NCBI GenBank assembly: GCA_047495785.1
Contig: JBLDXI010000009.1
Location: 1,798,001 to 1,862,000, forward strand
Direction: 5' to 3'
Source of the DNA: Lepidodermella squamata
Taxonomy: Eukaryota; Animalia; Gastrotricha
Length of the DNA stretch: 64,000 nucleotides
A program made the translations under genes and the position numbers. Below the pieces are notes generated by a model that did not search any database, had not been told where the DNA came from, and saw only the letters and a list, made by a program, of their open reading frames with translations. Every line of letters starts with the position of its first letter. Within the stretch, counting starts at the first letter, position 1. Shown piece after piece: positions 2,325 to 43,720 of this stretch.

Positions 2325-2503
2325 TACAATATTCCAACAACAAAATCTAGGAAAATGTATACATATTTTAGCGGGTGAAGCATTTAGCTTATTTTTTTCG
2401 TGCAAAGACTAAAAGCAGATTTTCGTAAGTAGAAATACTAATCTCTCCACAGAGTAAAAATGCATAATACATATCTTGGTTATATATTTCCGGTCATGAT
2501 TTC

Positions 2504-5399: not shown

Positions 5400-6235
5400 C
5401 TTAATTAATCCCTAATAAAAAAAATACCAAGTAAATTGTTTATGAAACAAAGCAATTTTCAGCATTTTATTCAATGTTAAGTAACTTCAATCGATTGTTA
5501 AGTTGGCACGTCAACGCTGAGTTGAGAAGAACAATTGGAATTCCGAATATTATAAACCTATGACTCCCTTTTGATTGACTGGAAAATGTACCAAAAATAT
5601 GTTACGAGCTTTAATATTAGAATGTATCTTCGTTAGTAAATAGAGCTTATCTCTTTTTCGTGTTAATTTCGTTAATTCGATGTGCTGATTGAAGAGGCAA
5701 ACAACAAGATCACAGCGCTCCAAGTGACGCGTGTTAAATATTATAGAAAAATAGCGCACAACAATTGCTGTTATTATTCTGAATTATAGTTTTGAACAAA
5801 TATCACCATCAACAAATTCGCGATTGACTCGGGCTAGGGTACACTAGCCACGCCACAGTAGATAGGTATACAAATGAGACGAAAAATGAATTCTGGAGAT
5901 TATAATTGCGTAAGTTCAATTCGAGAGGCCGGAGCCAATTATGAATTTTAGAAGCTTCAACAAGATGGTTGACAAGGTAAAAATATAGTGTGCTATTAGA
6001 TTTTTAAGGCGGCATTGGAGGGAAGACGATCGAAACGGAATTTCATCTGAAGTCGAAAGCGTTTGTCTCAATAGAGACCAAATGTGAGGAAGCGCAATTT
6101 AGACAAGATATTGTTCAGTGACTACGAGGAAATGCACCGGATTCCTCATGCATATCAGTTCAATTTATGCAAAACTAGCATAATATGTGGACCAAAATAG
6201 ATGCGATAAAAAATAACAATAGTAATTTGTTAAAG

Positions 6236-21842: not shown

Positions 21843-24800
21843 TTAGACCCTTGAGTCAACCTGTTCAGAGCGGTGCGCTGCATCATCTGAGAAATGTAAA
21901 ATAGATAAGCATCGACCAACGGTTTAGGCACAATAAACTAACCATCTTCGATGAAAGCAGTATTTGCTTTTCCTTTGTTTTTTCGACGAGCCGACGACAG
22001 CACCGGATCCAGTTGATAGGGAGCGAAGCCACCAATTTTCACTCCTGAGTCTTCGGTATCTACAGTGCTCCCTTCGGCAGATGTACCATTAATAGCATCA
22101 AGCATTAGCTCATGAATAAATCGGAATTGCTGTTCAGTCTAAACGGAATTCATAATTATAGGGCAGAGAAACTCAAAGCGGTGGTTACTTGAACTAGTTG
22201 ACGGTATTCCCTCAGTTTCCGAACCACGCCAGTAACGTCCAGCGGCCGACCAGCGGCCAGATCCTGAAGAAGTATATCAATCGCGATGAAAGCACCACTT
22301 CTTCCCACACCGGCGCTGCAGCTGTAAAACATTAAAACATTAAATGACATTCCAATCTCTAATTGACTCAACATACTGCACGACAATAGGCTCGACAACT
22401 TGGCCGGCAGTATGGTTCGCTTGGTTGCGAACCATCTTTATAAACCGTAGCAGATGTCCGCGATTTCGCCCGGATGGCACGCCCTGGTCCGGCCATGCGT
22501 TGAATTGATACTGTCGCAAAGTACGCGTTTGTGACGGCTGCGACTCATCATCGTTCGGAAGGCTTATTCGGAAGTCTCTAATCGTCCAAACACCACTGGA
22601 TGTGTCCCGTGAGTTATCGAAGTCGAAATGGTAATTATCAGTGCTTAAGGCCGGTGACGAGATCTCATCCGACTGACTCACCAACTGAACGTTGAGGGGT
22701 CCGAACGGATGCTCTCCTGCGTCACTGTCGACATGAGGTGGCCAGTAACACTCACATTTCCTTACGCCCCCTTCTTTCATTTTTGTCAGCATTACAATGG
22801 ACCCAACTCGTTGCTGCCAGACCAGACGCCAGAAGTCGGGAATAGTCAATGGTAGAGGTCCTTGAGTCGCAATGTACTCGTGATCAGAACACAACCCGGG
22901 AACGAAGTTGGCGTTGATGTAATCACATCCCTCTCCGTTGAGATCAAACTCGGCCGGAGAATTTTTATCGTCTTCGTCATCGTCATCATTAGATGCCAAC
23001 GACCGTCGCATTACGGCGCTCGGCCACGGCATTAATTTCACACGACTGTGATCATAAGGCAGCACGTTCGTAAACCGGTTTTTCAGTCGATTCACAGGCA
23101 GTTCGGCTGCTATAGTCGGTTGTTGCAATCCAACCAATCTAACTTCATCCCAAATTGTTGCATATCCTATGAAGGGAATACATCCCTGTGAAATAAATCT
23201 TTACATTTTCACTCGTAAAACTAACCAAGTCCGGAATTTTTCTCCAAGCTGCTGACATAGCCACCAAATTTATCTGGCGAGATAGCCCCTGGTGGGAACG
23301 AAGAATTCGTCAGATTAGGTGACGACGGAAACGCATCGTCGGCTAGTGCTAATCCAGGCGGCATTGAGACGTTGGCTTGCCATGTTTGTTTTGGTGTGTT
23401 TCGGCGATAGCGGCGCACTACGAAGATGAGCCCGACAACAAGAACTGCGCCGACAACCACGCCCGCTGCCGCTCCACCGCCCGCGGCGGCGGCATTGTCA
23501 ACAACCGCTGAAGAGGAGGGCGGCGCCTGCGTAGCAATACTTCTGCAAATTGAGAGTAAATCACGTCTGAAAGGCGGATTTGACCGCAGTAAAACAAATA
23601 CCCAGTGGGCGCAACGGCAGGGGCCGTGGCCTCAAATGGCAGCACGCGCTTCGTTGACAGTTGCGAGTTTGCGTCCTTGCCGGAAGGATCCCCTGATGCC
23701 GTTATTGTTATTGCTAGCTCATCGATGGAGTCGTTGTCCAGTTTTTTTATTTCGCAGAATACACGTTCGGAGAACTGAACATTTGACCAATACGCCGGCT
23801 CGCAAACCACTGAGGAGTTCTTCCGAGGGTGAGCCAGCTCTACCCAGAGACGCGCCACCAAATTTGTTTGGGACAAATAGAACGGATTTCGAATGTAAAT
23901 CATAGAGGCGGATATGTTCAGCCAATCGCCGAGTTCGGTCTGTAATTTCGGCCCTATTTATGACAATGCTTAAGAAATATTAGGATATAATCACGAATTT
24001 GCTTGCTTTCAAACGGTATCAGCAAAATGAAAGTGGACACTCGGCAGTCCGAAATATCGAAGATCTTTGCGCCAGACTGCCAATAAACAGACACCTAAAA
24101 CCAATCAAATTATTGAATATGAACTGTCTTGAGGACATACTCCTACCTCATACTGCTTGCCAGGTTTGACCGTGAAATCATAAGAAGTGAAGTTGGTGAT
24201 GTGAGTCTTCGAGCGCTCTTCGCTCAGCTCACGGTAAGATACCGTGTACGCCATCTGACTATCCTTAGACGGAAATACAACCCAAGAGCATCGACCGTAT
24301 ATTTCGTTCCTCTCGAAATCCGGGGGTCTGCAATCTAAGTTTTCCACTGAACGGTCGCAAAACTCGGGTCCACTTGTCGTCGATTGCAAATTCCCATTGC
24401 TCGTGGTAGAGGTTTTCGATGAAACGACAGGTGTCGTCGTGCTGAAGTAAACACCACTAGTGGTTACTTTGTAAGTAATAGCGGTTGATGGGATTTTTGC
24501 TGTGGTTATAAACACGGTTGTTTTGACAGAGGCAACGGTTGAGGTCAGCGCTGTCGTGGAGCTATTAGTCGTAGCAGTGGTTAACATTTCTGGTGTCCTG
24601 GTTGGCACAGTAATCGACGTCACGTTTGACAACGCGCTATTGTATGCGATTGTTGAGGTAGTCGGAATCGCAGTGGAGCGTACAAGCGTTGCGTTTAATT
24701 CATTTATCTGACTTTTTGGAATCAGCCTAGTAGCGTTAATTTCGGATTCGGAATTAGATAGCGGTGATATTATATCAGGCATCGCAGTTTCATTGTTGAA

Positions 24801-25589
24801 CGTGGCATTTTTTACTCCGGACTTGATGACAGAATGTTTGGTAACAACGGTACTAGTTTGAACTTCTGTAATCGGATGTACTCGCTCTGATGATGCACTC
24901 GGCGTTGATGAAGAAGGTAGATCGGACTGAAAATCAGCAGTCTTAGAATGTTTACTAGACAGCACCGGACTTGGCAAAGACAAAGTTGATGTCAATAAAT
25001 TAGCATAAATCGACTTGCTATGGATTACGGTTGAAATGGTCACCACTTTCGGAGAAGTAGTTGTGAAATTCGAGAAGTTACTAGGCGACTGAACCTGTTC
25101 ACTGGCATTGAAATCCATTCCCTTTACTGATGAATTTCTCGTAATTGAGGTCTTATCCAAGGTTTCATTGCCAACAAACGCTTTAGAAATGGCATTTTCT
25201 GTCAAATTAGCATTTTCAGGGACTGCAACTGATTTTGCAAGCCCCCGAGTAGCGTTTTTGAAATCAGATTTTTTATCATAAATATTGCCTTTCGGCAATT
25301 TCGAAATTGAAAAATCAGGAGAGCCGATTTTTGTTGTTGCATTGACATATGCCGCGGAAGAAGAATTTATCGGCAGGCTGGTTGGTCCGATGGAAAATAC
25401 GCCGCGAGGTAGTCCGCTTCTTATGTTCAGAACGTTCCGAGAGGCGGCGGCAACTTTTCCAGAGCTGAATGTGGCATTTTTTTCCACCGGCAGCGAATTA
25501 GATCCCGATTTTAAAATGAACGCATCCAACTTGACCGAAATTCCAAAAATAGCGAGCAACAGACAGGACTGAGCAAAAGCCAACTCCAT
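21843..25589 (-). CDS. Receptor-type protein tyrosine phosphatase, R3-like (signal peptide, Ser/Thr-rich stalk, FN3-like region, TM, single PTP domain)
   Basis: [35 protein letters not shown] and WPDQGVP motifs; [10 protein letters not shown] is split by an intron; VQ|TEQQF; [21 protein letters not shown]. Confidence 0.93.
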
Positions 25590-29080: not shown

Positions 29081-29519
29081 GATACAGAGGATGAATTTTC
29101 TCATGAAGTTAAAATTGTAAAATTAAGGCGGATAATTTAAATTAGTGATAGTAAGGATTATAAGCCTAATCTGATCCAGTAAATACGATTAATCTCTAAC
29201 TAAAGTTATCTCGGCCTGGCTCGCCTGCACAGCTCATGAAAAATAAGCTCCATGAAGAGTTTCGCCTTGATTGAATCGGTTTGTTTATTCATATTCGGTT
29301 TCAGCTCCGTATCGCAAACATCTCCAAGACAAGGCAGTCCCATTTGTTGCGTCCTTTCATTAATACTCTAAAGTTCTTATCAATTGCCTCCTTTGCAACG
29401 CCATGACTTTGCATGTGCTTGCCAATATCCGTATATCTGTGCCCACGTTCAACTCGTTAGTGTAGGTGTCGAGACGTCATCCCGACATAATCGGCATCGC
29501 ACCGATCACATTTAAAGTA

Positions 29520-29950
29520 CCGTCAACTGTCAAGCGACTTTGACGGTGGGGTCACTTTGCCATGGGAAAATGGGGTGACTTAAGCATAGCAATTCTCGAA
29601 GGTAGCCATGCTGATACCCCTCGAGTGGGGTACCCTAGGATGGCCCTAGAAAAGGCAAGCATTGATGTGTATACTACACGTCAATCGGTCGCCTTACCTG
29701 GTGATTAAAGACAGGTGAAGTTTATGAAATTTTTTGTTTTTTTGGCAAAATTACAATGACTCCGCAGTTAAGCAGGTGAGATCGAAATGATTGCACTCCG
29801 TCACATTTGGGCTGCCTTCTATGCGGGCTATCCAACGGTTACCCCACTCGAGGGGTATCAGCCTGGCTACCTTCGAGAATTGATGCTTAAGTCACCCCAT
29901 TTTCGCATGGCAAAGTGACCCCACCGTCAAAGTCGCTTGACAGTTGACAG
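29520..29950. mobile_element. MITE (Tc1/mariner superfamily) with ~115-bp TIRs and TA TSD, inserted in the Penelope GIY-YIG
   Basis: TA|CCGTCAACTGTCAAGCGACTTTGACGGTGGGGTCAC ... GTGACCCCACCGTCAAAGTCGCTTGACAGTTGACAG|TA; excision restores VVYYFKC. Confidence 0.93.
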
Positions 29951-31191
29951 TAATACACGACTCGCTGCTCGTTGATGATAGACGGCTTCGTCTCTTTGGG
30001 ACGAAAATTCTCGATGACCTTCCTGCTGACAAATATGGGTTCCAAACCCAGTTCAACCTTATTGCTGAGATCTCTCAATTGCCGTTTTACTATCCTAGAA
30101 GCTTTTTCATCGATGTAGGGAATAGGTTTCTGCGCCTTCTGATTTCTTATCCTCGCTGGATTTAGGTTTGCCAATTTCACCATTAATTTACCATCATCGA
30201 GAATTTTCGTCCCAAAGAGCCGACAATATGGGTCTCATGGCAAGCTCCTTCTCGTGGGTCTTGGGCAAACCTCTGAGGTGCACACGTCTGGCACCCTTGC
30301 TGTACACCAGTTCGGCAATCGCCTTACAGCTTCTTTACCGTCTCGTTTAGCTGTTTTTCACGCTCGAGGGTGATAGAATTACAGAAATCTTACAAGAAGA
30401 ACTGAGGTCAAAATTGGATTGCTATCTCAAAACAGAGTTTACTGCGCAGAGCAAACAAGCACGATCGGTTTGGTCACCATTCCGTTAAATGACCTGTCTA
30501 GTCATTATAGGACGGCTACATTGGAAGCACAACGCGATTGAGTCCGGATTCCGAAAAGGAGCTGAAGAACATGTTTCATAGATGTACATTTCCTGCAAAG
30601 ATAGCTCGGCCCCATGTTTGCCGAGTGCTTAACTTTGCACTCCCGAAAAAGGTATCCAGGGAAGATGTCATGGCGGCGTTTGAGCGCGGGTACTGGGAGT
30701 TGTACTGGGAATCGGAGGAAAGCGACTTCTCGAACTGGCTGTGAAGGACCAACTATTCCTCTTCCCTCTATTCTTCCCTCTCTCTGTTCCAATCTGTCTT
30801 CCAATCTTCCAGATTGCCTGACGCGGCGCTCTTCCTTTTCTTCCCTTTTATAGAAGAATTTCTGGTGTTTAGAGTCACTGACGAGCCAATCAGCTCGCGA
30901 CAAATTTCAATTTGAAAATTATTAAGGCGCATTTTTTATTGTGTTGCTGCGCAGAAAGCGATTTTATTGTCGCACACACAAAAATGCGTGCATTATTACC
31001 TATTTTGTGTGTGTGTGTTTGTGTATTTGAAACGCAAAATGCAGTGAATGAATACTCAGAAGCTGAAAACAACAGAATCACATCTCTCTCAGCGCAAAAG
31101 CCGCTCGTGCTGCATTTTATTTGACACGAATGACGAATGACGAATGACGAGAGGCAAACCCGCTTAGATACAGCCGCAGAGACTTTTTCCG

Positions 31192-31795
31192 GGATGTCTG
31201 TACTTGCACAAACGATTTTGCACAAAATGACTTGCACAAATGCACATGCATGTATGTATGTATGTATGTATAATAGCGTTGGATTCGCACTAAGGCGGTC
31301 TTCCATCCAACGGACGCAGATGGGCGCGTCGAGGTAAGGTGGCGAGTTACCTCTTCTTTGTGTAGACGAAATCGTCCACAAAATTGTTTGCACAAACTCA
31401 ATTTTCCAAGCGGAATCGATTTGAATATGAAAATTGAATGTACCGAATTGAAGGCAAAGCCATCTGGCATCAAAGACCGATTTCGGGACCTGCCTTATGA
31501 GATATTTTAACGCGTCTGATTCGAATTTAAATTACAAGGGGTGGCGAGTTTCACGTTCGGACCCTCGCCAACGATGAATTGATTGAATTAAGCTAAAATC
31601 AATCAGTCAATGATGCCATGCCCATTTTTTCTGCTAGTATTACTCAAGATCGCGCTGCCCTTGCATTAGCCAGCTTCGCTACGCATTGAATGATGAAATC
31701 CGCTTAGAAAATTGAGTTTGTGCAACAAGTTCTGTGCAACTGCATTTGTGCAGGTGATTTTGTGCATAATTGTTTGTGCAAGTACAGGTAAATCC
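31192..31795. mobile_element. Foldback-type MITE (GG..CC termini, TTGCACAAA subterminal repeats, 8-bp TSD TTTTTCCG)
   Basis: GGATGTCTGTACTTGCACAAAC... / ...GTTTGTGCAAGTACAGGTAAATCC; TSD at 31184-31191 and 31796-31803. Confidence 0.85.
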
Positions 31796-32064: not shown

Positions 32065-32664
32065 GGTTGTGTGCGAAAAGAGCAAGCGAAATAAGAGCAA
32101 TGATATTAGAGCAATGACATGAGAGCAAAACGAAATAAGAGCAACGAGATAAGAGCAAGATGACATAAGAGCAATTATATTATATTGGTTTTACACTGTG
32201 AATGTATGACTTAGGAGCAAGCGAAAAAAGCGCAGCGAAAAAAGAGCAAGCGATATGAGAGCAAACGAAAAGAGAGCAAACGAAATAAGAGCATAACGAG
32301 ATAAGAGCAATGTAATAAAAAGAGCAATTTTTTGGTACATTGATATGGCAAAAAAGGGCGTCAAGCACGCGATGTTGCTCATTATTTTTCATTAGCAGCC
32401 CCAAAGCCAATCAAAAAAGCGGGTTTCGTTGCCAATTCTTCGAAGAAAAAAACTGATTGGGCGCGTGCGAACTTATGATAGTGGGACGAAAGCTTGACAG
32501 AAAAAATGGCCGCATAGAAGAATAACATTTATATAGCAACTAGAAATAACAATATTGCTCTTATATTAAATTGCTCTTATCTCGTTGCTCTTATTTCGTT
32601 TTGCTCTTATGTCATTGCTCTTATATCATTGCTCTTATTTCGCTTGCTCTTTTCGCACACAACC
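32065..32664. mobile_element. Foldback-type MITE (GG..CC termini, 15-bp ..ATAAGAGCAA tandem subterminal repeats, 8-bp TSD AGAAACAG)
   Basis: GGTTGTGTGCGAAAAGAGCAAGCGAAATAAGAGCAA... / ...TTGCTCTTATTTCGCTTGCTCTTTTCGCACACAACC; TSD at 32057-32064 and 32665-32672. Confidence 0.92.
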
Positions 32665-33059
32665 AGAAACAGAAGTGCGATAGAAAAAAACCATGTAGAC
32701 TGAAGGGTAATACCAGCAGCAGTAACAACCGGGTTAATTAACAGCACATCAAAAGAGGGAGACGCAAAAGACACAGAAATTTACTAGACAGTCTTATTCC
32801 ACGCACGCACGCGCAACAAACAACGAATCGACAGAGAACAGAGCTCTATGACAACCACGACTGCGGAAATATGAAAAGAGCAGGAATGAGAGCAGCAGTA
32901 TTATCAGGGTTGTAATATTATAAGCGACATCTCAACAGGTATTTATTCAACCACAACCGCAACACGACAAGCTCGATGATAATAACGACGAAAATTACGA
33001 CTCTGTCGGATATTACTACTAAGTACAAAACAAACGACTGTGTGCACTTTGCTTGTTAT

Positions 33060-35659
33060 TCAAACGCGACGGTAGCGCCAAGGCTCACGAAGCACATTTA
33101 TAAGAACGGGGTAAAGAAGGTCAATGAACATCGCTTCGACCTTCTTCAACTCATCGGGAATCGCCAAAATACCGAAGTGGATCGGCAGAGCTGGATAGCT
33201 GCGACCATCTTGGGCTAACAACTGGCGGGCGATAGGTGATGTCAGGTCTACATTTCTAATGCTCGATAGGTGGTGACGGATACGTTCCAGCACGTCGTCC
33301 GACTCGCCAACGTAGAAAAGTCCGAGCCCGATCGTGTCGCTGAAGAAATAGACGCCACGAGCCTTGAAGTTGCAACGATTTAACGCGAAATTTAGCTGAC
33401 GCTCTTCGGCCAATTCACTGATGCGCGGTGTCGACATGACCGCCAAATCGGTTAAATCGGCTGTATTCGGTGCTGCTGCTGATGAATCGATGACCTTCTC
33501 ATCCGCGTTGATGATCTCCTCCACAACAGAGATCAATTCATCGACATCCAATTTGCTATCGTTGAACGGTCGAATGAAGGCCATAATCCGATCAGCGATG
33601 ATGACGTCAAATTGTTGCTGCTGCTGCTGCTGGGTGGTGATAGCATAGATAAGTTGGTGCGGGCTCATGTAATCGCGGTTAAAGTCGCAGTAGTACTTCG
33701 ATTTCCATCTGTTGTTGCCGCTGCCAGCAGTGGAAAAAGCCTTGCGCATGACACTCAACTGCTTCAGCGCATCTTCACCGATGTTGTTTGAGGCGTATAG
33801 GCGACTTTCATGGCCGCCTTCGTGCTCTCCATTAGATCGCCAGTGTAGTAGAAGAACAGCTGTATAATATAATAATAAATAAATTATCCATACATCATAA
33901 TGTCATATTATCATGTTTCAAATACTTTGATAATAATATTAATATCAACTTGCGATTTTAGCCAACTGGTTAGCATTTGGTTGATTATCGGGCTGCCACA
34001 GCACCACCAAACGACGGATATCCGGTGCACTGGCGAGATGAGCCGAAAACTTGGCAGCGCCCTCGTTTGAATACGGCGTACCTGATGGGAAAAGGTACTC
34101 GCGTGTTACCTTTGTTTTCGCGTTGGTTAGCGCGAAGACATGCCGACATCCAGCTGGTTCGTCGGCCTTGTAAAGCGACCAGCCGGTGTTTTCGAGCAAG
34201 ACCGATTTTTCAGCGATGAAACGCGACACGTGAAGCGGCGAGCGCAACACGAGTGCGACGTACTGCATCGGGCTGCCGGGGCAATGCATGCACACTTTCG
34301 TACAATTATCTTTAGGCTGCAACTGAAGTTTGGCGACAAATTCGGCTCGAGTTACATCAGCTGCCACGTTCCAGCAGTAAACAGTTTTATATTCGGCAAT
34401 TTCGGCTTTCGGATCGACCCGATAGCGACCAGCGCCGTTACGAAGTTTGCTGCCGAACAGTTCGACCTCAACTTTAGAGCTAATACTGCCAGCCACTCGA
34501 ACATTCGAGCCGTACATTGACAGAAATAGTGATGCTCTTTCCGAATTTCGAAAAATAGCGACGCCGAAAGCGTAAAAAGCGCCCGGAATCACGACGACAT
34601 TAATTTTCAAAACATCGCCGCGCACGCCTCGTTCAGCGAACACCAGCTCGAGGTCAGCGGTGGTAGTCGAGAGAGGAAGCTTTTTGAAAATTACGCAATG
34701 CTCGCAAAATTTCTCCAGCGAACAAATTTGCTCGAGCGCACTGCGTTCGTTGCGCCTATAATCATCAACGTAGTAAAGCGGAACGATCGAGCGCAAGGCT
34801 TTGAAAAATTCGACATCAGCTAAATTTTTGTCGATGTCAAGGTGCGTCCAAATTTGAAAGAGCTCGAGTGCAGCGGCCTTGCAAAACGGCGATAGTCGAA
34901 GTACCGGGCCGGGTAGTTCGATAATCTCCTGGCGTTGCAGAAATGTGCTAGCAGCCAAAGCGCTGGTGAATCGAATCACTACGCGATAGTGCATGTATCC
35001 CGTCATCGGTACTAGAGCCGAAACTAGAGTTCTGGCATCACACGAAACAGCGACCATAAACTTCCGGAGTTTTGCCAGTTGAGCAGCAGTTGCCACTCCG
35101 TGCACTAGCACCCAACAGTCTGGGTTGAAAGATTGCTGCTGCTGCTGCTGTCGCTTGATGCTGACATCAATAATGCCCGAATCGATTAGCGCGGTGGTCA
35201 TCGCTTCGTCGTCATCATGATCAACATCACCATGACCTGAAATCGAATAAGGCTTGCTAATTTCGCTTCGATCGACATCTCTGAACAAGGATGTGTCAGA
35301 CGATAATAATTCATTGAGGATCGAAGGGTTGACTGGCTGCGGCTGAGTTCTTCTTCCACACTATTGCTGGAATAACGCGAATCATCCCAAAGAAGATCGA
35401 CAAAATTCGAATATTGCAGCTGCTCATCATCACCATCATTGTGATCATCTCTAGTGCTAGGAAAACGCGAGTCGTCCCATAGAACTTCCATAATAAAATT
35501 CGAATAATGCTGCTGCTGCTGCTCATCAAGACCTGCTTCACCGACGAGGAATAAACTGCCATCTAACTGCTGTTGGCTTAATTGGCTACTGCCAACTGAC
35601 TCAGCGAATAAGCCATCATCGGCTAGAGCGGCGAGCTGTGATTCGGAAAACCCGGACAT
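33060..35659 (-). CDS. Predicted 819-aa multi-RRM / GIY-YIG endonuclease fusion protein (exons 35659-35287, 35236-33950, 33859-33060)
   Basis: Phase-compatible GT-AG introns of 50 bp and 90 bp join three ORFs into 2460 nt with no internal stop. RRM-like starts CWVLVHGV, CVIFKKLPLSTTTADL and TVYCWNVAADVTRAEF; GIY-YIG motif GVYFF...FYVGESDDVLERIRHH...VEAMFIDLLYPVLIN. Confidence 0.7.
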
Positions 35660-36996
35660 TGAAATAATTTATCTCAACTCTAATAACATAAATAAAGTAA
35701 TAAGGTTAAAATCGTGCCATAATAATAGGTATTATAACTAAGACTTCGCGTAAAAAAATTCGCCGAGTTTATTGTCACAGTTCGAAAAAAATTGTAGCAG
35801 GTCGGGTAACGAAACAAGTCCGCTCAAAATTTACGTAAATCCCGAAGCCTAAAACAAGAACGAGGGCAGCGAGCGAGAAACACTACCATCAATTAAAGCT
35901 CGCAAAACCGTCGAAGAGCAGGGTTGACACGGCACCCTTTCGAAGGATGCAAGAGATTGTCATCACAATGTAAAAAGTTGAAAATAATCAGAAACAGATG
36001 AAAGATAATAGCAATGAGCAACACAAAAGTTCACAGAACAGTTTCAACTTAGGCCAAATTCAGAGAGCTAAGGTGCTGGTCGTAGATCTAAAAGACACAA
36101 ATGAAAAGAAAATTCTAATAATATTTATCCACACAAAATAGCAAACCTTGAGAGCATCGGTCGAGCTAATTTTTGGGAAGCCGGTAGGGTTCGACTTGTA
36201 CGCTTCTACCACATCGAAAACGACCTCCGTCATCACTTTTGGGTTGTTGACGAGCTGCGCTAATCGCTGGCAGGTTTTCAGCGAATTCTCGCCTGGCGCC
36301 CATTCTTTTGCCGCAATGTAGAAGGCAGCAAGCACGCAGCTTTCGGTAGGCGCCATTCCGAATCGAGTGAAGACGTGATAGGCATTAGCCGCAAAAGCCT
36401 ATCAAATTCGATGAAAATTCGAAGAAAATTAAATAAATTTAAAAAGAATTTAAAAATGTTGCTAAACGAACTATAACATGAATTTTACGAATTTCTAATT
36501 GAATTATCAAAAGCGCGATAGGTACTTGATATATAAAATGCGAAGTCACATGGAAATGGAAAATCTCACCTTAGACAAGAACAGCTGGCCGAGTTCGTGG
36601 CCACGGATCTTCTCGAAATAGGGATTGCCTGCGACTACTAGGGTGTATTTTTTTATTCCCCGCCTCGCCCGGGGTAGCCCGCCGGATTTCACGGGAAAAC
36701 AATAAAAAAATCCGGGCTGGACGGGCAATGAGCACATTTTTTTATTCGCCCGTGTTTTGGTGCGGATGAGCTAGGATTTTCTGAGAATCGCGGGAAAATA
36801 GCAATAAAAAAATCTGGGAAACGCGGGCGCCCGAATGCATTCAGCAATACAGCCCAACTCTCCCGCGGGAAAGCGGGGAAACGCGGAATAATTATTGAAT
36901 GTTATCGGGTAGATCCGGAAAGTAACATCGCCTGAGCGCGTTTTTAACAATGCGCGTGATTCATGCTAATATCAGAAACTCTACCTATATAGTAAA

Positions 36997-38486
36997 GGGT
37001 CTAAATAAGTGCACCACCTAAAATAAGGTTCCAGCACTAAATTTGAGAGTACGTTTACCTAATTTGCAAACAGCTTACACTAAATTATTTGGGCACCTAA
37101 ATATGAGTTCCAGCACTAAATATCAGCATTCAGTGTCTATTACTGCTGTTAAGACCAGGTGAGGCTCTCAGGCATTCTCGACCACGCGTCTTCAGACCAT
37201 GCATGCTTAGGGTTTTACCTTATTCCCATAGAGAAAAAGTCACCAGAATAAGCACTCAAGCTGAAATTTTCATTTGCCTTATTATATTGAGCGCTTCTCC
37301 ATTGTTCAACAAATTTTGAAAGCATGTAGAACGCGAGCTGCTCTTTCATGTGGTATATATAAGATTTGAGGTGGGCAATTGCTCCTCAGTCTTGATCTCA
37401 TCAAAATAAATGAAATCGTAGTAAAAAAGCGGTTTTTGTATCGTCACAACAGTTGGGTTGCCTACCTCAAATCTTGTACCACGAGAAAGAGCAGCTCGCG
37501 TTCTATATGCATGTTCTATATCCGTTTTGAGAAATTCAACTTTAAATAAAAATGAAGATTCTGAAATTTTAGCTTGAGTGCTTAATGCCAGACATGAAAA
37601 TAAGGCCTATTATGCAAATGAGCCATGACGTTGAGATTAGCATCGCGTTATGATACACTCTTTTGCTCACTGCCGACAACTTTGCTCCGAACGCCGCCAT
37701 TGGCTCTTTTACGCGGGACCATCATGGTGGGACACTGAGTTACAGTATGGACTGTATTTCGGTGGCTTCTTCCGAAAACTTATCAGAGCTTCAATAATAT
37801 ATTTAGAGCTAATTGAGACATTGCAATCTCTATTATCGCAGTCATTGTTTAAAGGTTAGGCGTTGCGCAATAATGGTAACAGACGGCTTTTACCTTATGA
37901 AATGGATAGGATAGAGATGGGACTGTCATGATTTGCCACGTCGCGTTTCTGCAGGAGGCGAGCGGCTAGTAGCAAAGACTAAAATAGTATTTGCCCATGG
38001 CTATGGTAGACTATGGTAGACTAATGCTTCCCTCCTAAAAGAGGCCTTCTCAACGTAACTTAGATTTCAACACCCTGCCTTATTTGCATAGGAGCTTATT
38101 TTTTACGGCCTGGCAAACTTTTGACCTTTGACCTGCCAGTGATGCGTGAACCTGCTTGCGATTAGCGGCGGAATAACATTACAACCAAATTTGTGGTTAC
38201 TTAGTGTGGAATTTTTCATGGTTGATTCATCTTGCTTGGGGATAGGGTACAGGGAATAGGCCCCCGGTCGCTTGGCTGATCCTCGAAGTAACTGCTATCC
38301 AGCGGCCTCGCCAGTGCGACATGATGGCATTCCTATCCATGAATTAGGTGGTGGCTTTGTATATTTAGTGCTAGAGTTGCTTATTTAGTCCTAAATAGGA
38401 TTAGTGGGAGCGACTTTCAAATTTAGTGCTGGAGCTCCAAATTTAGTGCTGGAGTCTTTATTTAGGTAGGTGCAGTTGGCACACCC
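36997..38486. mobile_element. Mutator-like non-autonomous element nested in the hAT, 9-bp TSD TATAGTAAA
   Basis: GGGT.. termini, CCAGCACTAAAT repeats inverted at both ends, perfect TSD at 36988-36996 and 38487-38495. Confidence 0.85.
37251..37582. mobile_element. Palindromic MITE nested in the MULE (a second degenerate TIR element follows at ~37589-38113)
   Basis: AGCACTCAAGCTGAAATTT ... AAATTTTAGCTTGAGTGCT; internal arms TAGAACGCGAGCTGCTCTTTC / GAAAGAGCAGCTCGCGTTCTA. Confidence 0.75.
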
Positions 38487-41400
38487 TATAGTAAATTCAA
38501 AAATAAGACATTGTGATGCACATCGACTTCTGCGAATTTTTCGAGTTTACACGAATTAGCTCTGTCAAATACGAATTCCGTTATTTGAAATCGTTTGTTT
38601 TCGGCATCGATGAGGTTGTCATGGACTGTTTAATCTCCTTCGCGCTCTTCCAGGTCGTTCACCGCGTTATTTGCCCTTTTTCGTAACCCCAGGGAAATTC
38701 GAAAAATCGCTTCAGTAATATGACAATCGGTATAATGCGATCACAGATAGATAGGTTAGGCTGAGATGATTAATCTCGTATTCAATTTATTCAAATTAAA
38801 TTAAGTAATTCTTATGATTTTTTGTCAATTTTTTGCTGTGAAATCGCGTGCCTGATCAATTTGTTGCTTCATCGCCCGGCTTCGCCCGGTCTCAAAAGGC
38901 CGCGGGCGTTACGGGCTGGGCGGGAAGTGCGGGAAACTAGAGAAAATTGCTGAATGCTCTGCGAACGATACGGGCGAGTCGGGCTGTGTGGGCAGAATAA
39001 AAAAATGTACATGGGCAGTGCCCGGCTTTTTTGCGTTCGGGCAGGCCGGGCTGAATAAAAAAATACACCCCTATCGACACGAATGTCGTGCGGCGGTCGG
39101 TTGCTGCATCAGTGGACGACGCTTGCTGCGTGAAAAACAGCGCGCGAGAAGCGGAGGCGGACGACGACGAGGACGACGATTTCATCGATTGTGTCATCGA
39201 TGAAGATGAAGCTGCTGCTGGTGCGGCTGGCTGCCACTGTCGTTTTGTAGCCGAGCTGAAGCCCTGTTGTACTGCAGGAACTTGGCTGCGGCTAAACGTT
39301 TGAAAATTAATATCGGCGGCTTGGTGGGACGATTTTTTCTTGAACAACAGGCTGATGTCGTGCGTCATCGAATTGGCCACGCCGATGAAGGTGTTGCCAC
39401 ACGTTGTCACATCACCAGACGGCGATAACTTACACTGAAACAGGACAATTTTCAGATTTTTGTCAGGTTGCCTGTTCAGTCTCGCGAAGAACTCAACATT
39501 CTTCTCGTTCCAGACTGTCACCTCTGCGAATCACAAAACAATAAATTATGGAATTTTGAAAATATTATACTGTATAACGAGGTCTTCTTTCGCAGTATCA
39601 TTAATAAAATTTTCGATAAAAAGATTTCCCGTAAATAAAATGACTTACTTAACTGCGTGTCTCCGCCGTCTCCATCAGAGAGCGTCAGCGATCCGCAATG
39701 GCAAAGCCTGCTATCATAGCTGGCTGGATTGCTGCGAGTCCCGACCTCGGCGAAATCAGCGAACGTCCCAACAATAGAAATAACTATTTCGCGACCGACT
39801 GGCTTGAGGTCGGCCAGCGAGCGAATGTCGACGTAGCCATTCTCATCGTCGACTAACGGCATAAAATCGTCGATGTTAAATCGAAGATTATCACCATCAT
39901 GACTACTCGTAACCAGCAGCAGGTTGCCGGATTCCTCTCGTGCGATCAGGCGATAGCAGGGCCCTGACGAAACCTGAGGGAAAAAGTTTCGCTTTTTTTC
40001 CGGCATGCCTGCGCTGACGTCGCAGTTTTATGTGATACTTGTCACCGTAATGCAGATTTTCATAAAACTCCTTTGAGTTGAAGAAAAGCTCTCCGAGCTG
40101 AGGTTTCCCTTCCTCGCAGAAAACAAAATTCGTCGCAAATTTATGCTTCATGCCGAAGTTGAGGGTATTCATTGGTCCGAGGAATCTCAGGATTCCAATG
40201 AAAGGCTCCGACTGGCAATTTTTCGACATTCTGATGAGAACCTGACAACTTGAAATAAGCAAAACAATAAGCAACTTTCACGAGCAACAAAAATCTAAAA
40301 AAGTTGAAAAAATGTCAAAACTGGTAGCAGAGCCGTTATACGGAAGATGCGAAATTTGTCCATCATTTTATGTAAAAATTAGCTGATAAATGTATCGAGC
40401 AGCATATACAGCACTCATCTGAAAGTTATTTAGAACAATTGGGTTGGCGAAGCAGAGCATCAAAAGAGCGCCATGATGATGGCGATTACTAAAATAAATC
40501 TAGAGCAAAAGTTTTTGAAACTGGCGAAAAAATGAAAAAATTGGCAGCACGTATGCTAGCGGAACGCGATCGAGACATTTTATTGCGATGATGGCAGCAG
40601 AGTGAATCGCACCAACATTAAATACGGCATCCGCAGAGTTCCAAGAAATTTGATGTGTACTGTGCTGTAAAAAGTATCATCAATATGTTGGCAATATGTC
40701 GAAATTGCGACAAGAATCGACGAGTTTCGTGAAAAGTGCGGGAAACTTTTAATGATACGCATCGTCGCGCTGTAATAAGCAATAAAGCCTCGAGACACGA
40801 CGCAGCGCGTGAAAGAATCGCTACGCAAGTTGCTGTTTTTGCACACATTTTGCTGTATTATTACCGCATCAGCGTCAACGCCGATGCTCATATGCAATTT
40901 GAATTATGATGTTGCGTTCGGAAAACTTTGCTGAAACGAATATACGGCATGATCTGAAAAAATCACCGGTGTCATTGTGATGAAAAAGATGCATAAAGCA
41001 CTGCGACGAACATAATTTTTTTTCAACATCATAAGAAATGGATGATTTAATTATTTTTTGTATGCCCCCCCCTATCTAGAATAATTGCAGGCAGTAACAC
41101 TTTTCTTGATCTGATGTAATCTGCGAAGAAAAAATCGCAGCTAAATAATCATCTCATAGTATTCAGAGAGCATCGACTTCATCAGCAGTTTTTGTGACAC
41201 CCAAACACTTGGCATAACAGTTTGATACCAGGAAATTCAGGTCGCTTTTCGAAGCAGGTGCTGGAATCTACTATGCTGTGTGGGAAAGATTGCCTTTGAG
41301 CATTATTATTTTCTATAGACGATAATAGAACATGAGACTTCCTATAATGGAAAAGGAAAACTGTAACATTCAAATGAGGAAAAGGTTTTTTTCATTGATA

Positions 41401-41829
41401 ATCTGGCGACGGCAAAGGTTGGAACTGCGTGTGCGTTGTGTGTTGGAAAATTATAAGGTGATTTGACGGCTGCTGTTACTACATTCGCGTTGTACTACCA
41501 CGTGCATGGCTGATGATGGTATTTTTGTATACAGCTATATAGCTGCTGTAGAGCATGTCGGAGGCTGACACCCTATAATACGCAAAACATTCAGTCATAT
41601 TGCATCTCATCAGCAGTTGTTCATCTTGTTCATTTTTATTTTTTTCATTTTTAATCAGCCCGGGTTTTTCTGGGATTTTATTATTACATTTTATAACAAT
41701 ATTATAATTGGAAGACCAATTGGAAGAGTTGGAAGAAGAAGAAGGGAAGAGGGAGTGGAAGAATAGAGGGAAGAGAGAGGGGGAAGAAAGAGAAGGAAGA
41801 GGAAGATTGCATGAGGTCATGCTTTTTGG

Positions 41830-43150
41830 ATATTATAACTCAGTGCCCTCGATTTCGCTCAAGCTCGGAAAGCACACAATAAAACAAACACCCTCAATTA
41901 AGTACTTGGGTGTCACGCTGACCCCTCAACTCAGCTGGGAGCCTCACATATCCAGCATCTCCGCGAAGTGCCGTCCGAGAGCTGGTGTCCTACGAGGCAT
42001 CATGACACGTAAGATTTTGCCACAGCCACTAGGACTCATGTTTCATAAATCGATGGCCGAAAGCCTGGCCACGTACGGCTCGCCAGCATGGTCCTGTCAA
42101 CCCAAGTCTTCTATCAACAGACTATTTGAAATACAGGCGAACGGGCTTCGCGCTGCCCTCGATCTGCCTTACGACGCCGATTCCTTTGGCACTTTATTTC
42201 TGGCTGATGTGCCCTCAATTGAAGACATCTTCACCGAACGTCTGGAACGCTACGGCCAACGCTGCCTGGCAGCTGGCGATGTCATGGCCGACTACATTAA
42301 ATACATAGCTTCACTATCTTTCGATAGCTTCGGCCATAAGACCATGAACGATCATTCTCCCGCATGGCGCATACGGCACTTGGTCGATTTAATCCCAGTT
42401 ATGCCTCGGCGCAAAAATTTAAACTGGTTGATATTTGAAGTTCGGCCATCATTGCCAGAAACTTCTACTCTACAGCTGTGCACCTCATCCTTGCCTTTAG
42501 ATCCCTAGCCCTCGAGCCTACCGAGAATATCCTGCCCTCGTCTAATTCAGCGTCAGCCAATGCCTGTCCGTGCCCAGAACCCTGAGGCCTCAAATTCAAG
42601 TAACGTTTGCTTATTATGGCTAATTATTGTGCTTTATACACGACAGACATTTTGGCGAGCCTTGACTGAGCCTTTAAGCCTTTGAGCCCAGAGCCTTGAC
42701 TGAGCCTCCACCCTGAGCCCGCGAGCCTGAGCCTGGTTGGAGCCCTGACCGAGCCAACTGGTAAACAATTGTGCTTTGCCTTTTACAGAGCCTTGACTGA
42801 GCCTTCGCCCTGAGCCTACGTCATACGTGCCTTGAGCCTTCATCTGAGCCCTTCATCTGAGAAACTCACCCATCACCTGCAGTCTCGGAAAAATCTTATT
42901 GAGTAAACTTGAGCCTCCCCTCGTGCTTAATTTATTTTGTGTTGAGGACCAATCCCGAAACCCGAACTCGACTCGGAACAACGGAGCAATCCTAATACGA
43001 ACAGAACAAAGCGTCAAGCCAAGCGAACCACCCAAACAAACCAGCTGCAAACCAGTCACTCAGAATCAAAACGAGTCAATATAACAAAAAATAATAATAA
43101 TAAAATATATAATGATAAAAAAATTAATCATAATGATGTATGATAATTTG
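41830..43150 (+). mobile_element. 5'-truncated LINE (RT thumb/C-terminal region, GAGCC-repeat 3'UTR, A/T-rich tail)
   Basis: IKQTPSIKYLGVTLTPQLSWEPHI...LATYGSPAW...IQANGLRAAL, characteristic of non-LTR RT C-termini. Confidence 0.88.
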
Positions 43151-43464: not shown

Positions 43465-43720
43465 GAGGTGCGTTTTTTATTAAAACCGTGGTGCTATTGT
43501 TCAGCGCTGTGATCAATGTTTCGGTGAGATTCGCAACAGAGGCGGCCAAATGTTCTTAATCCGCGCGGGGATTTGTCTTTTCTGACCGGCCTTGATCGCA
43601 ATTCGAGCCGTTCAGTTCATGATAGACGTGCCGGTTGTGATTTCTCTGTTGCGAATCTCACCGAAAAATTGATCACAACGCTGAACAATAGCACCACGGT
43701 TTTAATAAAAAACGCACCTC
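43465..43720. mobile_element. 256-bp MITE with ~75-bp TIRs
   Basis: GAGGTGCGTTTTTTATTAAAACCGTGGTGCTATTGTTCAGCG ... CGCTGAACAATAGCACCACGGTTTTAATAAAAAACGCACCTC; TSD not resolved. Confidence 0.85.

What the first reader, a model, noticed from the sequence alone, without database searches (positions are those of the whole stretch)
33060..40229. Co-oriented two-gene module: RPA70-like ssDNA-binding gene + RRM-GIY-YIG nuclease (candidate new mobile element or system)
Seen: once the nested TEs are removed, the OB-fold gene (stop 36050) lies ~390 bp upstream of the nuclease gene (ATG 35659). Both are on the same strand, both have introns and low-complexity tracts, and they sit in a TE island between housekeeping blocks. 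Known: Helitrons can carry RPA70-like genes, and bdelloid Terminons carry co-oriented ORFs including GIY-YIG nucleases and GDSL esterases. No Rep/Hel, transposase or RT belonging to this module is visible. Inference: an ssDNA binder plus an RNA-binding nickase looks like the cargo or core of an undescribed large element, or a lineage-specific DNA-processing system.
Basis: partly seen in the sequence, partly recalled or inferred. Interest (0 to 1): 0.85.

Follow-up and report, generated by a model that had tools for sequence, protein, structure and literature searches.

The report
Orphan OB-like plus nuclease gene pair
Two neighbouring, spliced animal genes with no detectable relatives anywhere sit here: one very probably ends in a GIY-YIG DNA-cutting domain, the other is only guessed to bind single-stranded DNA, and nothing at this locus shows that the pair is a jumping element.

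Summary
The layout is real. Two co-oriented minus-strand genes with introns lie 391 bp apart. The upstream one is split by a nested 2,430-bp TIR transposon, and its frame continues across the empty site.

- **GIY-YIG nuclease:** the C-terminal domain is supported by six weak but concordant searches, all at the same residues. The nearest relatives are phage EndoII-type nucleases.
- **RRM:** support is at fold-hint level only.
- **RPA70-like/OB:** no tool supports this.
- **Relatives:** no piece of either gene matched anything in billions of proteins or in metagenome and viral contigs.
- **Mobility:** I found no Rep/Hel, RT or transposase, no bracketing repeats or terminal hairpins, and no second copy in the window. 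Codon usage is host-like, and each gene has its own poly(A) signal.
- **Public DNA run X1:** its contigs hold the locus without the nested transposon, so that insertion is recent or polymorphic.
- **Frame breaks:** each gene has one, bridgeable only by a weak 53- or 55-nt intron.

The scan found this cassette before on other DNA of this genome (for example s1-373947, s1-374030, s1-393990, s1-402137). I could not reach those copies.

My verdict is a lineage-restricted gene pair that is partly damaged at this locus. It may derive from a mobile element, but it is not shown to be one.

The parts
35334..35659 (-). Nuclease gene exon 1. It encodes an acidic N-terminus with two copies of a roughly 31-aa motif (YSNF..LWDDSR).
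   Evidence: ORF from ATG 35659. Direct repeat D6 has 93-nt spacing. X1 shows a length variant between 35413 and 35513.
35281..35333 (-). Frame break in the nuclease gene. It is either a candidate 53-nt intron (GTCAAC..TTCAG) or a genuine frameshift.
   Evidence: The frame changes between ORF 35198-35659 and ORF 33945-35288. Splicing this stretch out gives an open 818-aa model. The donor is weak compared with host introns.
33950..35280 (-). Nuclease gene exon 2. It holds three ferredoxin/RRM-like modules at about 34860-35123, 34434-34703 and 34140-34391.
   Evidence: Atlas feature search gives RRM clusters at 0.82-0.89. The AF2 model has beta-alpha-beta-beta-alpha-beta order for modules 1 and 2 at pLDDT 50-62. 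Foldseek gives weak hits, mostly tandem RRMs. Pfam is blank and there are no homologues.
33860..33949 (-). Nuclease gene intron, 90 nt (GTTGAT..TACAG), phase-consistent.
33060..33859 (-). Nuclease gene last exon. It contains a poly-Q linker and the C-terminal GIY-YIG-type nuclease domain (core about 33063-33410).
   Evidence: Pfam PF01541 E=0.006-0.012. PADLOC PDC-S14 E=3.6e-5. The best phage tblastn hit is annotated as a GIY-YIG nuclease, E=0.01, 32% identity over 111 aa. PDB T4 endonuclease II E=0.06. TIGR01453 E=0.17. Atlas score 0.92. Alignment A1.
32942..32947 (-). AATAAA poly(A) signal of the nuclease gene, about 113 nt after the stop.
40019..40229 (-). Upstream ('OB-like') gene exon 1a, starting at ATG 40229.
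   Evidence: No family or structure match.
39964..40018 (-). Frame break in the upstream gene. It is either a candidate 55-nt intron (GTCAGC..CGTCAG) or a frameshift.
   Evidence: An X1 contig covering 39777-40029 differs from the window only by 3 letters and a 3-nt insertion, so the break is not an assembly error.
39649..39963 (-). Upstream gene exon 1b.
   Evidence: No match in Pfam, PDB, the Atlas or the homologue search.
39524..39648 (-). Upstream gene intron, 125 nt (GTAAGT..CGCAG).
39074..39523 (-). Upstream gene exon 2, 5' part, including the Ser-rich low-complexity tract.
36641..39070 (.). Nested transposon inserted in the upstream gene's exon 2. The outer element has 18-nt perfect TIRs and a CTA target-site duplication. 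Inner TIR elements lie at about 37016-38467 and 37249-37584. The insertion is absent from X1 contigs.
   Evidence: Inverted repeats I22, I8 and I17. X1 joint 36634->39071 skips 2,436 nt in 2 contigs, and the TE bins have very high summed depth. Flanking sequence checked.
36570..36640 (-). Upstream gene exon 2, 3' part. It is in frame with the 5' part once the transposon and one TSD copy are removed.
36399..36569 (-). Upstream gene intron, 171 nt (GTGAGA..GATAG).
36147..36398 (-). Upstream gene exon 3, encoding a C-terminal region that I read as helical (not tested). X1 holds two versions of it, one identical and one 89% alike. X2 holds 68 identical nt.
36088..36146 (-). Upstream gene intron, 59 nt (GTTTGC..TTTTAG).
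36049..36087 (-). Upstream gene last exon, with stop codon TAA at 36051-36049.
35660..36048 (-). Spacer, made up of the upstream gene's 3' UTR and the nuclease gene's 5' flank. It holds an AATAAA at 35773-35768, about 108 nt before the nuclease ATG, and a short dispersed repeat at about 35800-35999.
   Evidence: for the signal. In one search the 35800-35999 bin has summed depth 684 against about 170 beside it, and X2 has a 90% match at 35820-35938.

Best explanation
This is one locus of a lineage-restricted (orphan) tandem gene pair that is resident in the host genome.

**Gene A** is modelled at about 445 aa. It has an N-terminal half whose strand pattern looks OB-like by eye only, then a Ser-rich linker, then a C-terminal region that I read as helical.

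**Gene B** is modelled at about 818 aa. It has an acidic repeat N-terminus, two or three ferredoxin/RRM-like modules, and a C-terminal GIY-YIG nuclease domain of the phage EndoII-like kind. The Tyr, Tyr, Arg, His, Glu and Asn motif positions are all present by alignment and by eye.

**Likely mechanism (inferred).** The RRM-like modules hold a single-stranded nucleic acid and position the GIY-YIG domain to nick or cut it. The partner protein, if it really is an OB protein, coats the exposed strand. The genes are packed like a co-expressed pair: there is a 391-bp spacer, and the first gene's poly(A) signal lies about 108 nt before the second gene's ATG.

**Likely origin (inferred).** The pair probably derives from accessory genes of a mobile element, most plausibly the SSB-plus-GIY-YIG Helitron-like elements that earlier notes report in this genome. 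It probably spread by block duplication rather than by its own transposition.

**State of this copy.** The copy is damaged or nearly so. In the assembled haplotype a young nested transposon splits gene A. Each gene also has one frame break that only a weak short intron could bridge.
For: **Shown**
- Gene structure, phases and poly(A) signals.
- Nested TE with TIRs and TSD, and a TE-free joint in X1.
- GIY-YIG matches, all at the same residues: Pfam E=0.006-0.012; PADLOC 3.6e-5; phage GIY-YIG nuclease, 32% over 111 aa; then about 500 T4-type endonuclease II records; PDB 2wsh E=0.06.
- In alignment A1 the Tyr, Gly and Arg of the core and the C-terminal IDL..P..PW are invariant.
- RRM-like hints.
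- Orphan status: no hit for any piece among 5.8 billion clusters, by phmmer over 1.84 billion representatives, or in metagenome and viral contigs.
- Host-like codon usage in the correct frame.
- No mobile-element hallmarks.
- The coding bins are not high-copy at 80% identity or more in X1.

**Leads only**
- Earlier notes report the same pair duplicated as a block elsewhere in this genome.
Against: - The OB assignment has no tool support at all.
- RRM-likeness rests on a low-confidence model (pLDDT 38.7) and on feature scores below 0.9.
- The GIY-YIG scores are all below curated cut-offs, and the fold could not be predicted (pLDDT 33).
- There is no RNA evidence. X2 is only guessed to be RNA. 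It touches gene A exons faintly and does not touch gene B between 34400 and 35599.
- The two frame breaks and the TE insertion may mean this copy is simply a dying pseudogene.
- Of the 12 X1 differences that the tool listed inside my CDS models, 10 are non-synonymous. The sample is small and biased.
- Earlier notes place the cassette on several scaffolds in TE-rich settings, which a mobile element would explain as well as block duplication does.
Confidence: 0.5

Rival explanations
1. The pair is cargo, or a non-autonomous derivative, of the Helitron-like (HLE2-type) elements of this genome. Earlier notes say those elements carry a separate SSB-like gene and a Rep-Pif1 protein ending in a GIY-YIG nuclease. 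On this reading the RRM-like region stands where Rep-Hel was, and the unit is moved in trans.
For: - Published work finds RPA-like genes upstream of RepHel in HLE2, an endonuclease downstream, and one captured GIY-YIG (PMC11417382; PMC6431247).
- Earlier notes report such elements and 'mini-RPA70' companion genes in this genome, one of them 1.42 Mb from this window. These are leads only.
- The gene order (binder first, then a protein ending in GIY-YIG) is the same.
- The locus sits in a TE-rich stretch.
Against: - There is no Rep or helicase remnant in the window.
- No GC-rich terminal hairpin or short TIR lies near either border.
- The notes describe the Helitron GIY-YIG domain as SLX1-type and well preserved. 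This one barely registers in Pfam, and its nearest hits are phage EndoII-type.
- The OB-like gene matches no RPA profile.
- Codon usage is host-like, and the coding bins are low-copy at 80% identity or more.
Confidence: 0.18
2. The pair is the core of a new kind of selfish or mobile unit. A nuclease guided by RRM-like modules, together with an ssDNA binder, would copy or home the cassette without Rep, RT or transposase.
For: - Several first-stage notes describe the same cassette on other scaffolds, some as 8-10-kb units with extra orphan genes. These are leads only.
- Free-standing GIY-YIG genes of phages are typically homing endonucleases (established knowledge), and the nearest hits are phage nucleases.
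- Both genes are orphans.
Against: - Nothing at this locus marks element ends.
- The genes have spliceosomal introns, host-like codon usage and poly(A) signals.
- In a second sample (X1) the gene sequences recur on fragmented contigs, with no sign of high copy number.
- An earlier follow-up on a sister copy also found no sign of mobility.
Confidence: 0.1
3. This locus is a non-functional relic. Both genes are pseudogenes that keep long open frames only because they died recently.
For: - Each gene has one frame break, and the only bridging 'introns' have weak GTCA donors and are GC-rich, unlike host introns.
- A TE insertion lies inside a coding exon.
- The X1 differences listed are mostly non-synonymous.
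- There is no clear RNA support.
Against: - The long frames are otherwise intact (447 and 232 codons).
- The GIY-YIG motif positions are all kept.
- The indels that could be checked in X1 keep the frame: a 3-nt insertion at 39889, an empty site that is 3 nt shorter than predicted, and a net 87-nt change in the N-terminal repeat. Two weaker joints do not fit: 40029->40160 skips 130 nt, not a multiple of three, and 39389->39609 removes an intron acceptor. Both may be paralogues or spurious.
- The TE is absent from X1 contigs.
- The frame is exactly preserved across the empty site.
Confidence: 0.22

Closest known systems
Phage T4 endonuclease II (DenA) and related free-standing phage GIY-YIG nucleases, e.g. 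Ralstonia phage RSF1 ORF068
   Same: - These are the best sequence matches to the last exon.
- The GIY..YIG hairpin, the Arg of the following helix, and a C-terminal IDL..P..I....PW stretch are shared (alignment A1).
   Different: - Identity is only 22-32% and E-values are 0.01-0.06.
- The phage proteins are small and free-standing, without RRM-like modules.
- This gene is a spliced animal gene of about 818 codons.
- At the position aligned to the Glu that I recall as catalytic in T4 EndoII, this protein has Leu. A Glu lies seven residues upstream, as in RSF1.
Helitron-like elements (HLE1/HLE2) with RPA-like and endonuclease accessory domains
   Same: - An ssDNA-binder gene lies upstream of a protein that ends in a nuclease, in the same orientation.
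- GIY-YIG capture by an HLE2 family has been reported once (PMC11417382).
   Different: - There is no Rep or helicase, and no Helitron termini or hairpin.
- The binder matches no RPA profile.
- The usual HLE2 nuclease is of the AP-endonuclease type.
Penelope-like elements and bdelloid Terminons
   Same: - A GIY-YIG nuclease sits at the C-terminus of a long protein.
- Terminons carry co-oriented accessory ORFs that include stand-alone GIY-YIG nucleases (PMC6431247).
   Different: - There is no reverse transcriptase anywhere near.
- I saw no telomeric or hammerhead-ribozyme signals (Rfam was blank).
- Whether the domain is of the Penelope type could not be tested.
Host GIY-YIG repair nucleases of animals (SLX1, ANKLE1/LEM-3); comparison from general knowledge
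   Same: These are animal, intron-bearing genes in which a GIY-YIG domain is joined to non-catalytic targeting modules.
   Different: - Those families are conserved across animals and are easily recognised.
- This protein has no detectable orthologue.
- It carries RRM-like modules rather than RING, ankyrin or LEM domains.

Membership tests
GIY-YIG nuclease superfamily | Sequence match to the GIY-YIG catalytic-domain profile, including the GIY...YIG hairpin | tested here: inconclusive
   Pfam PF01541 scores 16.3-17.3 bits (E=0.006-0.012), below the gathering score of 22.6. Matches at the same residues agree: PADLOC PDC-S14 3.6e-5, a phage GIY-YIG nuclease at E=0.01, T4 EndoII at 0.06, TIGR01453 at 0.17. 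VYF and FYVG are readable in the sequence.
GIY-YIG nuclease superfamily | Conserved Arg after the hairpin, plus the catalytic Glu and Asn near the C-terminus | tested here: inconclusive
   The Arg is invariant in alignment A1. A Glu (in ..VEAMF..) and an Asn (in ..VLIN..) have canonical spacing by eye, but the column aligned to the Glu that I recall as catalytic in T4 EndoII holds Leu.
GIY-YIG nuclease superfamily | The GIY-YIG alpha/beta fold | tested here: inconclusive
   The single-sequence AF2 model was unusable (pLDDT 33). No homologues exist from which to build an alignment.
RPA70-like / OB-fold ssDNA-binding proteins | Profile match to RPA/OB domains | tested here: not met
   Pfam, NCBIfam, PHROGs, PADLOC and PDB gave no hit at E<=1-10 for any exon piece. 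The nearest Atlas clusters are unrelated transposase fragments. Caveat: both putative OB domains are split, one by an intron and one by a frame break, and had to be searched in halves.
RPA70-like / OB-fold ssDNA-binding proteins | Five-stranded OB barrel by structure | not testable with these tools
There is only an OB-like alternation of strands as read by eye.
RPA70-like / OB-fold ssDNA-binding proteins | Cys4 zinc ribbon of DBD-C | tested here: not met
   The 445-aa model has no CxxC...CxxC pattern.
RRM (RNA recognition motif) | Profile match to RRM families | tested here: not met
   Pfam is blank for the whole 447-aa ORF and for each module alone at E<=10. PDB sequence search is also blank.
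RRM (RNA recognition motif) | Beta-alpha-beta-beta-alpha-beta fold with RNP1/RNP2 aromatic residues | tested here: inconclusive
   The AF2 model gives this order of elements for modules 1 and 2 at pLDDT 50-62. The best Foldseek hits are mostly tandem RRMs at E 1e-3 to 4e-2, mixed with other ferredoxin-like folds. Atlas scores are 0.82-0.89. Only module 2 shows RNP-like motifs by eye.
Helitron-like element | Rep (HUH) plus Pif1-type helicase | tested here: not met
   No such Pfam hit on any ORF of 60 aa or more that I tested between 24 and 47 kb.
Helitron-like element | Defined termini (3' hairpin with CTRR, or short TIRs) shared among copies | tested here: inconclusive
   No GC-rich hairpin lies within 0.4-1.4 kb of either border and no bracketing repeats were found. 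Other copies were out of reach, so the ends cannot be defined.
Penelope-like element / Terminon | Reverse transcriptase of the PLE clade | tested here: not met
   There is no RT profile hit. The only RT-tail-like ORF (41708-42508) is on the other strand and has no Pfam hit.
Mobile element of any kind | Multiple copies with common ends, target-site duplication and an empty site | tested here: inconclusive
   There is one copy in the window. In X1 the coding bins are far below the TE bins in summed depth. Empty sites for the whole pair could not be examined. Other copies are reported only in notes.

The most novel reading that the evidence does not exclude
The OB-like gene and the RRM-like/GIY-YIG gene together form a self-propagating cassette of a kind not yet described. 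It would be either a homing-type nuclease unit adapted to an animal nuclear genome, or a Rep-less offshoot of the GIY-YIG-bearing Helitron-like elements. In either case the nuclease would be aimed by single-strand-binding modules and the partner protein would protect the intermediate. That would explain why the pair recurs on several scaffolds of this genome yet has no relatives elsewhere.
Probability: 0.12. Interest if true: 0.8.

Novelty: new variant of a known kind. Interest (0 to 1): 0.4.

Why it matters
If the nuclease call holds, this is an animal GIY-YIG protein with an architecture (RRM-like modules plus an EndoII-like GIY-YIG domain) that I found in no paper of the held library and in no protein collection. 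It is also consistently paired with a second orphan gene.

A pair like this sits on the border between host genes and mobile DNA. Working out whether it spreads by duplication, by Helitron-like carriage or on its own would show how accessory genes of transposons become host genes, or new elements.

At this particular locus the added value is modest. It is one more copy, and a partly damaged one. It does show a polymorphic transposon insertion inside the coding exon.

Tried and rejected
**Homologue searches, all blank**
- The 447-aa ORF.
- The GIY-YIG region.
- The OB-like piece.
- Metagenome and viral contig scans.

**Structure prediction**
- Single-sequence AF2 failed for the GIY-YIG exon (pLDDT 33).
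- It was poor for the RRM-like region (38.7).
- Foldseek on the latter gave nothing at E<=0.001.

**Other blanks**
- The Atlas search on the OB-like piece returned unrelated transposase fragments.
- The internal-repeat test found that the three modules are not significantly alike in sequence. Only modules 1 and 3 reach z=3.1.
- Rfam and tRNA scans of 30-44 kb were blank.
- Searching earlier findings by sequence was blank.

**Introns for the frame breaks**
- An exhaustive GT/GC..AG scan gave many candidates but none with a host-like donor.
- I kept the 53- and 55-nt candidates only as possibilities.

**Ideas considered and dropped**
- I considered whether the RRM-like region is a decayed HUH Rep domain. 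I saw no His-hydrophobic-His motif by eye and dropped the idea.
- I did not use contig depth as a copy number, because the tool warns against that.

- One coordinate error occurred.

Full report
**1. What is there**

The window is from an animal genome. It has short GT..AG introns and host genes such as SprT/GCNA-like, a P-type ATPase, an AP-mu subunit, PTP, GrpE, a C-type lectin, P450s and a PHD protein.

On the minus strand between 40229 and 33060 lie two co-oriented genes.

*Gene B, the nuclease gene*
- It starts at ATG 35659.
- There is a frame break at about 35333-35281.
- A 1,331-nt exon follows.
- A 90-nt phase-consistent intron lies at 33949-33860.
- The last exon ends at stop 33060, and AATAAA follows at 32947.

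*Gene A, the 'OB' gene*
- It starts at ATG 40229.
- There is a frame break at about 40018-39964.
- A 125-nt intron follows.
- The next exon is interrupted at 36641-39070.
- Two more introns (171 and 59 nt) follow.
- Stop TAA is at 36051-36049, and AATAAA is at 35773.

**2. The nested transposon**

The interruption is a 2,430-bp element with perfect 18-nt TIRs and a CTA target-site duplication. At least two further TIR elements sit inside it. With the element and one TSD copy removed, the reading frame runs straight on.

Contigs of a public run that holds 78% of the sampled words of the locus (X1) include two contigs that join 36634 directly to 39071. This is the empty site. It is 3 nt shorter than predicted and is still in frame. 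The insertion is therefore recent or polymorphic, and uninterrupted versions of gene A exist.

The TE bins carry summed contig depths of about 850-7,100, against about 130-390 over the coding bins. So the genes are not a high-copy repeat at 80% identity or more. The tool warns that depth is not a copy number, and I take it no further.

**3. Domain claims**

*GIY-YIG.* No single search reaches a curated threshold, but six searches point to the same residues of the last exon:
- Pfam PF01541, E=0.006-0.012.
- PADLOC PDC-S14, E=3.6e-5.
- tblastn against 2.3 Gb of phage records. The best hit is annotated 'putative GIY-YIG type nuclease' (E=0.01; 32% over 111 aa in BLASTP), followed by about 500 T4-type endonuclease II genes.
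- PDB T4 endonuclease II, E=0.06, covering almost the whole domain.
- TIGR01453, E=0.17.
- Atlas feature scores of 0.91-0.92 for GIY-YIG clusters.

In alignment A1 the Tyr and Gly of the YIG motif, the following Arg, and a C-terminal IDL..P..PW stretch are invariant. I accept a divergent, EndoII-like GIY-YIG domain as probable.

*RRM.*
- Pfam is blank, even per module.
- The Atlas lists only RRM-clan clusters, at 0.82-0.89.
- A low-confidence AF2 model (pLDDT 38.7) gives beta-alpha-beta-beta-alpha-beta order for two modules.
- Foldseek's best hits, none significant, are mostly tandem RRMs mixed with other ferredoxin-like folds.

'Ferredoxin/RRM-like' is a fair description. 'RNA-binding' is not shown.

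*OB/RPA70.* Nothing supports it in any library. Both putative domains are split and had to be searched in halves, so a blank is weak evidence. The claim nevertheless rests on reading alone.

**4. Orphan status**

No piece of either gene has a detectable relative:
- The word-indexed search of 5.8 billion clusters was blank.
- phmmer over 1.84 billion representatives was blank for the 447-aa ORF.
- Metagenome and viral contig scans were blank.

**5. Is it a mobile element?**

At this locus I found none of the hallmarks:
- No Rep/Hel, RT or transposase profile hit in 24-47 kb.
- No direct or inverted repeats of 25 nt or more that bracket the pair.
- No terminal hairpins near either border.
- No second copy or fragment in the 64-kb window.

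Codon usage in the correct frame is like that of the neighbouring host genes. Each gene has a poly(A) signal.

Earlier notes of this scan describe the same cassette on several other scaffolds of this genome. One follow-up concluded that it is duplicated as a block with no sign of mobility. The notes also describe Helitron-like elements whose Rep-Pif1 protein ends in an SLX1-type GIY-YIG domain and which have a separate SSB-like gene.

These are leads. Published surveys do report RPA-like genes upstream of RepHel in HLE2 elements, and a captured GIY-YIG domain in one family (PMC11417382). This makes a Helitron-derived origin the most concrete rival.

**6. State of this copy**

Each gene has one frame break. 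Each can be bridged only by a short, GC-rich stretch with a weak GTCA donor (53 and 55 nt). Host introns here are AT-rich with GTAAGT or GTAATT donors, although about 53 nt is a normal length.

An X1 contig across the gene A break matches the window, so the break is not an assembly error.

X1 also shows in-frame length variants:
- A 3-nt insertion at 39889.
- A net 87-nt change in the N-terminal repeat of gene B.

It also holds a second version of gene A's exon 3 that is 89% alike. Two weaker X1 joints do not keep the frame: 40029->40160 skips 130 nt, and 39389->39609 removes an intron acceptor. Both may be paralogues or spurious.

Of the 12 X1 differences that the tool listed inside my CDS models, 10 change the amino acid. 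This is too few, and too biased toward linkers, to call selection.

No run on record as RNA holds the locus. X2, which is only guessed to be RNA, touches gene A exons faintly and does not touch gene B between 34400 and 35599.

**7. Verdict**

The anatomy is confirmed. The nuclease call is probable. The RRM call is a fold-level hint. The RPA70 call is unsupported.

The best reading is a lineage-restricted tandem gene pair: a nuclease with single-strand-binding-like modules plus a partner protein. It is possibly derived from mobile-element accessory genes, and this copy is partly damaged.

Noticed in passing
window 36641-39070: Three-deep nest of TIR elements. The outer one has the TIR GGGTGTATTTTTTTATTC and a 3-bp CTA target-site duplication. 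The inner ones lie at about 37016-38467 and 37249-37584. The innermost part reaches summed depths of about 6,000-7,000 in X1, so it belongs to a very abundant MITE family. The whole nest is absent from two X1 contigs.
   Followed up: partly
window 35800-35999: Short dispersed repeat inside the upstream gene's 3' UTR. Summed depth in X1 is 684, against about 170 beside it. X2, from another organism label, has a 90% match at 35820-35938.
   Followed up: no
window 35281-35333 and 39964-40018: The single frame break in each gene is bridgeable by look-alike 53- and 55-nt GTCA....TCAG stretches. These could be an odd intron class or a coincidence. RNA reads are needed.
   Followed up: partly
window 35402-35528: Two copies of a 93-nt coding repeat (motif YSNF..LWDDSR) in the nuclease N-terminus. 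X1 has a variant that replaces about 99 nt with 12 nt, which keeps the frame.
   Followed up: no
window 36138-36409: X1 holds two versions of this exon, one identical (depth 39.4) and one with 29 differences in 272 nt (depth 98.3). Their depths add up to about that of the neighbouring single contig. These may be very divergent alleles or a paralogue.
   Followed up: no
window 29518-29952, 29988-30223, 31198-31787, 32065-32664, 43465-43720: Several MITE-like inverted-repeat units lie around the pair. One has 119-nt arms built of GAGCAA-type short repeats.
   Followed up: no
window 41708-42508 (+): A 266-aa ORF whose sequence reads like the C-terminal tail of a non-LTR (LINE) reverse transcriptase. 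It has no Pfam hit and lies on the strand opposite to the pair.
   Followed up: no
window 24105-25589 (-) and 3562-5079 (-): Two long ORFs (494 and 505 aa) with no Pfam family.
   Followed up: no
window 35660-35773: The upstream gene's AATAAA lies only about 108 nt before the nuclease ATG, with a T-rich ..TTATTAG just upstream of the ATG.
   Followed up: no
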